This document shows positions 58,214 to 58,489 of a stretch of DNA of 64,000 nt, one piece after another. This DNA comes from Heterodontus francisci (lineage: Eukaryota). Numbering within the stretch: the first letter of the stretch is position 1; every line of letters starts with the position of its first letter. The stretch is from assembly GCF_036365525.1 (NCBI RefSeq), contig NC_090399.1:50252430-50316429 (forward strand), written 5' to 3'. The notes beneath the pieces were generated by a model, which was not told where the DNA came from, ran no database searches, and saw only the letters and a list, made by a program, of their open reading frames with translations. Position numbers and translations under genes: made by a program.

Positions 58214-58489
58214 CTTTCCTCTCAAAATACTCCTTTCCAGCTCGTAAATATTTCCTTAAATCCTGAACGAATCCTTGTTCCAGATGAGATTTCCAATACT
58301 GGTTCCAGGATTCATCAGAATTCCATTTCTCCTTAATCCTGACTGCATTATGATTGGTTGCAATCCATCTCATTCTGTCTGGCTCTAAACTAATATAGTC
58401 CTTTCCATCATATCCAACACGCATCGATCTCTTAATGGAGCCGTCGTCAGTGATCTCAACAATAGTCATCCATTGGAAAGTGTGAATTC
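58214..58489 (-). CDS. MHC class I-like gene B, exon 3 (alpha2 domain)
   Basis: 276-bp phase-1/1 exon encoding (G)IHTFQWMTIVEITDDGSIKRSMRVGYDGKDYISLEPDRMRWIATNHNAVRIKEKWNSDESWNQYWKSHLEQGFVQDLRKYLRAGKEYFERK. HTFQ, YDGKDYI, KW and LRKYL motifs present. A 117-bp intron separates it from alpha3. Confidence 0.94.

What the first reader, a model, noticed from the sequence alone, without database searches (positions are those of the whole stretch)
58214..58489. Class I-like alpha2 domain that has lost both cysteines of the groove disulfide, in an otherwise intact gene
Seen in sequence: the alpha2 exon contains no Cys. Aligned by eye to HLA numbering, HTLQRMYGC becomes HTFQWMTIV (C101V) and YLEGTCVEWLRRY becomes HLEQGFVQDLRKY (Y159H, C164F, W167D), with T143I as well; Y123, K146, W147 and Y171 are kept. 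All five coding exons are open with canonical phase-1 splice sites. Established knowledge: the C101-C164 bridge is near-invariant in class I, CD1 and MR1. Inference: paired replacement by V and F looks like a compensating hydrophobic contact rather than decay, pointing to a functional nonclassical molecule with a remodelled groove that may bind non-peptide ligands. It could belong to a described chondrichthyan nonclassical lineage (e.g. UCA or UEA) or to a new one; I cannot tell without a search.
Basis: partly seen in the sequence, partly recalled or inferred. Interest (0 to 1): 0.8.

Follow-up and report, generated by a model that had tools for sequence, protein, structure and literature searches.

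The report
Horn shark disulfide-less class I gene
This is a real exon of a shark immune-type (MHC class I-like) gene that lacks the usual internal disulfide bridge, but the whole large shark gene family it belongs to lacks that bridge and the gene is already in public annotation, so it is an ordinary member of a known kind.

Summary
Window 58214-58489 (minus strand) is a phase-1 alpha2 exon of an MHC class I-like gene with no Cys: Val sits at the C101 position and Phe at C164.

It is not a private oddity. RefSeq already annotates the gene in Heterodontus francisci as XP_067865855-59. It belongs to a shark-only multigene family. Of 97 fetched relatives at 53.8% identity or more, none has Cys at 101 and none has both Cys. 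Of 128 more distant class I proteins covering both sites, 124 have both. Residue 164 is hypervariable in the family, so a specific V/F compensating pair is weakly supported.

By elimination the family is most likely the published UEA lineage. I had no named UEA reference and could not read the two primary papers.

"Otherwise intact gene" is only partly supported. Five exons (alpha2, alpha3, TM, two cytoplasmic) are open with canonical sites. No leader or alpha1 exon lies upstream in the window. The leader and alpha1 that are present belong to the downstream neighbour gene, and the RefSeq models start at an internal Met. RNA-type contigs show splicing, and in one coded organism an alpha1 end joined to this acceptor.

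Interest is low to moderate.

The parts
58214..58489 (-). alpha2 exon (276 nt, phase 1 in and out); no Cys; Val at the C101 position, Phe at the C164 position
   Evidence: 100% identical to RefSeq proteins P0178/P0255 from their first Met
57818..58096 (-). alpha3 exon (279 nt, phase 1), Ig C1-set domain with both Ig Cys; gene-specific Leu for Pro (VQLEV) and Arg for Gly (VTRFYP) at family-conserved columns
   Evidence: (PF07654, E 5.2e-17)
55282..55401 (-). connecting peptide / transmembrane exon (120 nt, phase 1)
   Evidence: (40 of 40 residues of P0255); spliced joint 55401/57818 with CT..AC ends (GT..AG on the minus strand) in contigs of X2 and X22
53608..53640 (-). cytoplasmic exon 1 (33 nt, phase 1), DSPSVTYTTAH
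51822..51853 (-). cytoplasmic exon 2 with stop codon (SDVTVPAPS*), C-terminus of RefSeq isoform X1 (P0255)
53916..53930 (-). coding end (DTLV*) of the alternative last exon used by RefSeq isoform X2 (P0178); exon limits not determined
58490..64000 (-). upstream intron (or upstream flank) running off the window. It holds a 28-bp satellite 58706-60298, an N run 60362-60507 next to a CCTTCC-type repeat, antisense reverse-transcriptase ORF fragments about 60718-62900, and a 35/70-bp satellite 62978-64000. No leader or alpha1 exon detected.

Best explanation
The exon is the alpha2 domain of an already annotated horn shark gene (RefSeq XP_067865855-59). The gene belongs to a shark-specific, multicopy, nonclassical MHC class I family, most likely the published UEA lineage. 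The alpha2 disulfide was lost in the family's common ancestor. Val became nearly fixed at position 101, while position 164 was released from constraint and now varies between sublineages; it is Phe in this one.

Inferred mechanism: a type I membrane heavy chain that still folds into the normal alpha1/alpha2 platform on an Ig C1-set alpha3 domain, probably paired with beta2-microglobulin. Its groove lacks the classical clamps for peptide ends (Tyr7 and Tyr84 are never present in the family). It therefore does not present peptides in the classical way and may bind another, possibly hydrophobic, ligand or none.

For this locus the five exons from alpha2 to the stop are intact and transcribed. Its leader and alpha1 exons most likely lie beyond the window end, behind satellite-filled intron sequence, as in the neighbouring gene.

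Shown: sequence, family membership, the family-wide Cys loss, the splicing. Inferred: beta2-microglobulin pairing, ligand type, location of the 5' exons, the name UEA.
For: - Exon and domain identity.
- Identity to H. francisci RefSeq proteins P0178 and P0255: 100% over alpha2 (from the internal Met), alpha3 and TM.
- Family size and spread: 108 hits at E 1e-10 or better. The close ones come from Heterodontus, Scyliorhinus, Mustelus, Carcharodon, Cetorhinus, Heptranchias, Stegostoma, Chiloscyllium, Hemiscyllium, Rhincodon and Pristiophorus. Several carry many loci on one chromosome-scale record each.
- Cys counts: 97 proteins at 53.8% identity or more have 0 Cys at 101 (V 83, A 3, I 2, L 2, 7 not covered). 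None has both Cys. Of 128 proteins at 45.1% or less that cover both sites, 124 have both.
- In the curated alignment of 83 family rows: V 77, I 2, A 2, L 2 at 101. At 164: L 26, F 22, Y 8, C 7, S 7, G 5, D 3, W/T/H 1 each, 2 gaps. No row has more than one Cys in alpha2. All 9 outgroup rows are C/C.
- The family is a supported clade (SH-aLRT 98, stem 0.74) apart from ray and teleost class I.
- Family residues at classical anchor positions: Y7 in 0 of 67 covered rows, Y84 0 of 69, Y159 14 of 69, Y59 28 of 69, T143 49 of 69, K146 61 of 69, W147 69 of 69, N86 69 of 69.
- The AlphaFold2 model of the full-length close relative P0172 (V101/F164 type) has block-mean pLDDT 92-97 over residues 21-190. 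Best structural matches are class I heavy chains, TM-score 0.88 normalised to the target.
- Splicing: canonical TM-alpha3 joint, exon-limited depth, and a contig on 58365-58490 whose overhang reads as the family's alpha1 C-terminal end.
- Literature: the passages I read say sharks have two expanded class Ib families. UBA derives from UAA; UEA is multicopy and older. UDA, UFA and UGA are single copy (PMC10751288 section 9; passages of PMC12562908).
Against: - No named UEA sequence was at hand. The two primary papers (PMC7002201, PMC8454915) are not held, so the lineage name rests on elimination and on my recollection of an abstract.
- The RefSeq models lack leader and alpha1 and begin at an internal Met, which would give a protein without a signal peptide.
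- No alpha1 or leader was found in the 5.5 kb upstream.
- Two gene-specific replacements hit alpha3 columns conserved in 90% or more of the family: Pro to Leu, and Gly to Arg in the GFYP motif.
- Contigs of all four runs carry the paralogue-type letter, not the window's, at 58019 and 57862. Transcription of this gene's own alpha3 is therefore not shown.
- The contig that joins an alpha1 end to alpha2 comes from coded organism B. It differs from the window at 4 of 126 letters, so it may be an allele or an orthologue, not this exact gene.
- Beta2-microglobulin pairing and ligand type are untested.
Confidence: 0.8

Rival explanations
1. The locus is a 5'-truncated remnant or pseudogene of that same family. 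It lost its leader and alpha1 exons, is still transcribed and spliced from upstream non-coding exons, and makes no surface protein.
For: - RefSeq isoforms X1 (four accessions with one protein) and X2 all start at the Met inside alpha2.
- No leader or alpha1 lies in 58490-64000.
- There are gene-specific Pro-to-Leu and Gly-to-Arg changes at conserved alpha3 columns.
- The window's own letters at 58019 and 57862 are absent from the contigs of all 4 runs.
Against: - All five in-window exons are open with canonical sites.
- The gene has 5 deviations at 109 conserved columns, rank 21 of 83, so it is not an outlier.
- Its alpha2 end branch is very short (0.027, against 0.31 for its sister P0165).
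- A near-identical alpha2 is joined to an alpha1 end in organism B.
- The neighbour gene has a 22-kb intron 1 and an intron 2 longer than 5.4 kb, so 5' exons outside the window are expected.
- Another horn shark model, P0165, is also 5'-truncated, which suggests an annotation limit.
Confidence: 0.3
2. One reading: a new nonclassical lineage in which a private, paired C101V/C164F replacement remodels the groove.
For: V101 and F164 are both hydrophobic. Phe recurs in 22 of 83 family rows, including the closest cross-species relatives P0172 and P0192, which share the EQGFVQDL motif.
Against: - The state is family-wide and old: 97 of 97 close relatives lack Cys101.
- Position 164 also takes L, Y, S, G, D, C, H, T and W.
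- The gene and its relatives are annotated in RefSeq.
Confidence: 0.03
3. Assembly or sequencing error hides two Cys codons.
For: None found.
Against: Contigs from X2 and X22 cover both codons and list no other letter there. The RefSeq protein and about a hundred relatives show the same state.
Confidence: 0.01

Closest known systems
Shark UEA nonclassical class I lineage (Almeida et al., J Immunol 2021; seen only as a reference-list title and in passages of PMC10751288 and PMC12562908)
   Same: Multicopy, found in sharks, far from classical UAA, lying on the chromosome record that carries the other horn shark family members. The classical peptide-end anchors are poorly kept.
   Different: Nothing found that differs. 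However, no named UEA sequence was compared, and I could not check whether the paper reports the loss of the alpha2 Cys pair.
Classical shark class I (UAA; solved structure 6lup) and other classical class I (chicken BF2, Anolis 7cpo)
   Same: Same exon plan (phase-1 alpha2, alpha3 and TM exons), same fold in the model of P0172 (TM-score 0.88 normalised to the target), N86 glycosylation site, K146 and W147.
   Different: About 40% identity in alpha2. No C101-C164 bridge. In the family Tyr7 is never present in the 67 covered rows and Tyr84 never in 69; Tyr159 is present in only 14 of 69.
Lipid- or metabolite-binding class I-like molecules (CD1, MR1, chicken YF1*7.1; shark UFA/UGA as mentioned in PMC12562908 and PMC10751288)
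   Same: Nonclassical, with a groove lacking classical anchors. The model superposes on YF1*7.1 (TM-score 0.88 normalised to the target) and MR1 (0.82) about as well as on classical chains.
   Different: UFA and UGA are described as single or low copy, while this family is multicopy. That CD1, MR1 and YF1 keep the alpha2 disulfide is my own knowledge. Nothing here shows lipid binding.

Membership tests
MHC class I heavy chain superfamily | alpha2 half of the alpha1/alpha2 platform (Pfam PF00129) | tested here: met
   PF00129 E 1.4e-18, 67.6 bits against a cut-off of 28.3, profile positions 93-177 of 179; 503 PDB class I chains at E 1 or better
MHC class I heavy chain superfamily | membrane-proximal Ig C1-set alpha3 domain followed by a TM segment | tested here: met
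   PF07654 E 5.2e-17; the TM exon encodes a hydrophobic stretch and matches P0255 40 of 40
MHC class I heavy chain superfamily | leader and alpha1 exon upstream of alpha2 | tested here: inconclusive
   None in 58490-64000. The window ends 5.5 kb upstream, inside a satellite. A contig of organism B joins an alpha1 end to this acceptor.
MHC class I heavy chain superfamily | C101-C164 disulfide in alpha2 (a near-invariant hallmark, not strictly defining) | tested here: not met
   Val and Phe at these positions; 124 of 128 distant class I proteins keep both Cys
Shark UEA lineage | multicopy gene family | tested here: met
   At least 5 distinct horn shark loci (P0004/P0153, P0154, P0161, P0165, P0178/P0255) on one 74.5-Mb record, two of them tandem in this window. 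Many 90%-identity clusters per species in Chiloscyllium, Hemiscyllium, Cetorhinus, Carcharodon and Mustelus.
Shark UEA lineage | present in sharks, not in rays or chimaeras (as I recall the paper's abstract) | tested here: met
   All named hits at 53.8% identity or more are from shark genera (one further hit, P0232, is an unnamed JGI record). The nearest ray proteins (Mobula, Hypanus) are 41% identical, keep both Cys and fall outside the clade. Limited to what the databases hold.
Shark UEA lineage | poor conservation of the nine peptide-end binding residues (as I recall the abstract) | tested here: met
   Y7 0 of 67, Y84 0 of 69, Y159 14 of 69, Y59 28 of 69; W147, K146 and T143 mostly kept
Shark UEA lineage | clusters with named UEA reference sequences | not testable with these tools
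   No protein named UEA came back. Papers PMC7002201 and PMC8454915 are not held.
Shark UEA lineage | linkage to the MHC | not tested
   Only earlier unchecked scan notes place class II genes about 1.68 Mb beyond the window on the same piece. [quoted passage not shown]
Classical class I (UAA) | complete set of peptide-end anchors plus the alpha2 disulfide | tested here: not met
   I143, H159, V101 and F164 in this exon; family counts
Shark CD1-like UFA/UGA | single- or low-copy gene (passage of PMC12562908) | tested here: not met
   The family is multicopy. No UFA or UGA sequence or structure was available for direct comparison.

The most novel reading that the evidence does not exclude
A whole class I family dating back to the common ancestor of living sharks has done without the alpha2 disulfide. 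It has an almost invariant Val at 101 and a freed, sublineage-defining residue at 164 (F, L, Y, S, G, D, C and others). If this has not been analysed in print, position 164 may act as a specificity or flexibility switch of the groove. The family would then be a natural experiment on how the MHC fold is stabilised without the bridge. Within it, this gene would represent a Phe164 sublineage (EQGFVQDL motif) kept across four shark orders.
Probability: 0.25. Interest if true: 0.5.

Novelty: new member of a known kind. Interest (0 to 1): 0.28.

Why it matters
For the scan, this removes a high-scored candidate. The Cys-less alpha2 is the normal state of a large, publicly annotated shark class Ib family, not a new lineage.

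For immunology the family-level fact is still worth a sentence. None of the 90 close relatives that cover position 101 has Cys there, against 124 of 128 other class I proteins that keep the pair. This shows the bridge is dispensable for a long-lived, expanding class I family, and points to position 164 as a variable groove residue.

For annotation, RefSeq's models of this gene are probably 5'-incomplete because of satellite-filled giant introns.

Tried and rejected
- Alpha1 and leader. I looked for them upstream of alpha2 in three ways: stop-free stretches in 58490-64000, tblastn with 14 family proteins, and the 30-letter overhang of a contig. Nothing was found there. The only leader (28033-27983) and alpha1 (5682-5423) belong to the downstream neighbour P0154.
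- Lineage naming. No source name other than automatic 'F10 alpha chain-like' labels came back. Six paper searches were run. led to the two secondary papers cited here. None gave a readable description of shark UEA residues or of its alpha2 cysteines, so I cannot say whether the Cys loss is in print.
- dN/dS. Not computed, because no nucleotide sequences of paralogues were available. I only classified the letters that differ in contigs. In alpha2 there are 5 replacement changes (K79R, Q63K, I51V, H46Q, P36S) and 3 silent ones, too few and of mixed origin.
- Structure. Only a single-chain AlphaFold2 model of the relative P0172 was made. No coordinates are returned, so the V101-F164 distance could not be measured, and no complex with beta2-microglobulin was modelled. 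Foldseek does not separate peptide-, lipid- and metabolite-binding relatives.
- A slip of my own. I first took 7cpo for the shark structure; one search shows it is Anolis, and the shark one is 6lup.
- Rejected readings: assembly error, a private V/F pair, and a gene joining the in-window leader and alpha1 to this alpha2. On the minus strand those two exons lie downstream of the gene's stop codon.

Full report
**What is there.** The finding lies on the minus strand. Translation of 58215-58487 gives IHTFQWMTIVEITDDG...EQGFVQDLRKYLRAGKEYFERK, 91 residues without Cys or stop. The exon is 58489..58214, 276 nt, with an AG acceptor, a GT donor and phase 1 at both ends. Pfam assigns it to the second half of the MHC_I model (E 1.4e-18). 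HMMER alignments to solved class I chains are ungapped or nearly so. They put Val (exon residue 10) opposite the first groove Cys and Phe (residue 73) opposite the second. The best chain, 7cpo, is Anolis.

**The rest of the gene.** Downstream on the same strand lie four more exons:
- an Ig C1-set alpha3 exon, 58096..57818;
- a connecting-peptide/TM exon, 55401..55282;
- a 33-nt cytoplasmic exon, 53640..53608;
- a last exon, 51853..51822, ending in a stop.

All have AG/GT signals and phase 1. I searched the exons apart and did not join them.

The database holds the spliced product. P0178 (XP_067865859.1, 222 aa) and P0255 (XP_067865855-58.1, 239 aa) are from Heterodontus francisci and are named 'class I histocompatibility antigen, F10 alpha chain-like'. 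They are 100% identical to the window's alpha2 (from an internal Met), alpha3 and TM exons. The gene is therefore already annotated, and the genome is horn shark.

**The 5' end.** Both RefSeq isoforms start at the Met of WMTIVE inside alpha2, with no leader and no alpha1.

In the 5.5 kb between alpha2 and the window end I found no alpha1 or leader. I looked by open frames, by tblastn with 14 family proteins and by a 30-letter probe. That stretch holds a 28-bp satellite, an N run next to a simple repeat (left untouched), antisense reverse-transcriptase ORF fragments, and a 35/70-bp satellite that runs off the window.

The window does contain a leader (28033-27983) and an alpha1 exon (5682-5423) on the minus strand. 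They lie downstream of this gene's stop codon, and they match another horn shark RefSeq protein, P0154: 17 of 17 residues for the leader, and 91% over the 100-residue alignment that covers alpha1. They belong to the next gene in a head-to-tail tandem. That neighbour has a 22.3-kb satellite-filled intron 1 and an intron 2 longer than 5.4 kb. The studied gene's 5' exons may therefore simply lie beyond the window. 'Otherwise intact' is not shown.

**Transcription.** One run search and one lay (55200-58705; runs X1 and X4 of coded organism A, X2 and X22 of organism B; all kept as contigs) gave the following.
- Depth is confined to the exons among the non-repeat parts of the stretch. It is 0 in the alpha2-alpha3 intron bin for X1 and X4, and 0 in 58593-58705 for all four runs.
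- X2 and X22 show a canonical TM-alpha3 joint at 55401/57818.
- X2 and X22 also show an alpha2-alpha3 joint with seven replaced letters.
- In X2 and X22, contigs on 58365-58490 carry the window's MTIVEITDD type, with 4 other letters in 126. They run on upstream: 39 letters in X22 and 285 in X2. The 30 letters printed for X22 read, on the gene's strand, as the family's alpha1 C-terminal end (MIMKSTNQTS).
- Organism A has contigs identical to the window over 58390-58441 (X4). By my own arithmetic on tables 2 and 3, an X1 contig also reaches about 58488.

Against this:
- Every run carries the paralogue-type letter at 58019 (Gly, not the window's Arg) and at 57862.
- Parts of the alpha2 contigs look like the paralogue P0165.
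- The library type of these runs is only a guess.

Splicing at these sites is shown. Expression of exactly this gene with an alpha1 exon is not.

**The family.**
- A full HMMER search with the alpha2 exon found 540 proteins at E 0.001 or better.
- A word-indexed search with the paralogue P0004 found 108 at E 1e-10 or better.
- Of the 245 fetched proteins that BLAST-match the exon, there is a clean gap between 45.1% and 53.8% identity.
- The 97 proteins above the gap are all from shark genera, except one unnamed JGI record. None has Cys at 101 (V 83, A 3, I 2, L 2, 7 not covered) and none has both Cys.
- Of the 128 below the gap that cover both sites, 124 have both Cys.

In an alignment of 83 family rows the counts are as follows.
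- Position 101: V 77, I 2, A 2, L 2.
- Position 164: L 26, F 22, Y 8, C 7, S 7, G 5, D 3, one each of W, T and H, and 2 gaps.
- No row has more than one Cys in alpha2.
- All 9 outgroup rows are C/C.

For that alignment I dropped the fused multi-domain models P0151 and P0152, the isoforms P0153 and P0178, 20 partial models, and the teleost hits P0251 and P0252.

The family is a supported clade (SH-aLRT 98, quick tree). Residue 164 needs at least 22 changes on an alpha2 tree built without that column, against 42-52 in 200 shuffles. It therefore follows sublineages but changes often. Val101 is the constant and residue 164 the variable. This weakens the idea of a specific V/F compensating pair, although Phe is kept in the closest cross-species relatives P0172 (Chiloscyllium, 83.5%) and P0192 (Cetorhinus, 82.4%).

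**Which lineage.**
- PMC10751288 (section 9 read in full) says elasmobranch class Ib genes form one cluster with single-copy UDA and multicopy UEA, and a separate multicopy UBA cluster.
- PMC12562908 (passages) says UBA derives from UAA, UEA is older, and UDA, UFA and UGA are single copy.

A multicopy, shark-only family about 40% identical to other class I in alpha2 fits UEA by elimination. The poor conservation of peptide-end anchors fits what I recall of the UEA abstract: Y7 0 of 67, Y84 0 of 69, Y159 14 of 69.

I could not compare named UEA sequences. The primary papers are not held, and six text searches found no readable description of UEA cysteines. The name is therefore an inference, and whether the Cys loss has been described in print is unknown to me.

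**How it probably works.** The family keeps the following:
- the N86 glycosylation site (69 of 69) and W147 (69 of 69);
- K146 (61 of 69);
- both alpha3 Ig Cys, which are among the invariant columns.

An AlphaFold2 model of P0172, built with the family alignment, has block-mean pLDDT 92-97 over residues 21-190. It superposes on classical chicken, shark (6lup) and lipid-binding YF1*7.1 chains at TM-score 0.88 normalised to the target, and on MR1 at 0.82.

I infer a normally folded class I-like heavy chain, probably with beta2-microglobulin. Its groove cannot clamp peptide ends classically, and its alpha2 helix is held to the sheet by hydrophobic packing around Val101 in place of a covalent bond. 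The ligand is unknown. Hydrophobic ligands are a reasonable guess but are untested here.

**Is this copy healthy?** It has 5 deviations at 109 columns conserved in 90% or more of the family, rank 21 of 83, which is not an outlier. Two of them are shared by the horn shark genes. Two are its own: Pro to Leu in VQPEV, and Gly to Arg in GFYP. Its alpha2 end branch is short, 0.027. I put a complete functional gene at roughly 0.55-0.65 and a truncated remnant at about 0.3.

**Verdict.** The interpretation as a nonclassical class I domain is correct. Novelty is not supported. This is a horn shark member of a known, publicly annotated, family-wide disulfide-less lineage.

Noticed in passing
window 27983-28033 and 5423-5682 (minus strand): Leader and alpha1 exon of the neighbouring family gene (RefSeq P0154, 329 aa), head-to-tail with the studied gene. 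Its alpha2 lies beyond the window start. Intron 1 is about 22.3 kb.
   Followed up: partly
window 5979-10423 and 10428-26580: One 40-bp satellite family fills the neighbour's intron 1 and flips orientation at about 10425: the two consensus units are reverse complements, and the GC skew changes sign there. About 112 plus 405 copies.
   Followed up: no
window 4848-5246 (plus strand): A 39-bp satellite next to the neighbour's alpha1 exon matches residues 74-126 of the bamboo shark RefSeq model P0006 at 66-81% (E down to 1e-13). That model seems to translate intron satellite, and a related satellite sits near family genes in two shark orders.
   Followed up: no
window 57818-58096 against 58214-58489: The alpha2+alpha3 tree groups the five horn shark genes together (SH-aLRT 90). 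The alpha2-only tree puts this gene and P0165 with genes of three other shark orders (SH-aLRT 87). The alpha3 exon looks homogenised within the species.
   Followed up: partly
window 58017-58019 and 58087-58089: This copy has Arg for the family's Gly in the GFYP motif and Leu for Pro in VQPEV, both at columns conserved in 90% or more of the family. Contigs of all four runs show the Gly-type letter at 58019.
   Followed up: partly
window 56370-57773: Reverse-transcriptase-like ORF fragments on the plus strand inside the alpha3-TM intron carry very high contig depth (up to about 18,000 in X1). This is as expected for an abundant transcribed repeat, not for this gene.
   Followed up: no
window 53963-55272: An 88-bp satellite (about 15 copies, 95% alike) fills most of the TM-cyt1 intron. 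The coding end of the alternative last exon of RefSeq isoform X2 (DTLV*, 53916-53930) lies just beside it.
   Followed up: no
proteins P0005, P0011, P0150, P0165 (other sharks and horn shark): Several RefSeq models of this family are truncated, fused (P0151 611 aa, P0152 694 aa) or skip alpha3. Automatic annotation seems to struggle with these satellite-rich loci.
   Followed up: no
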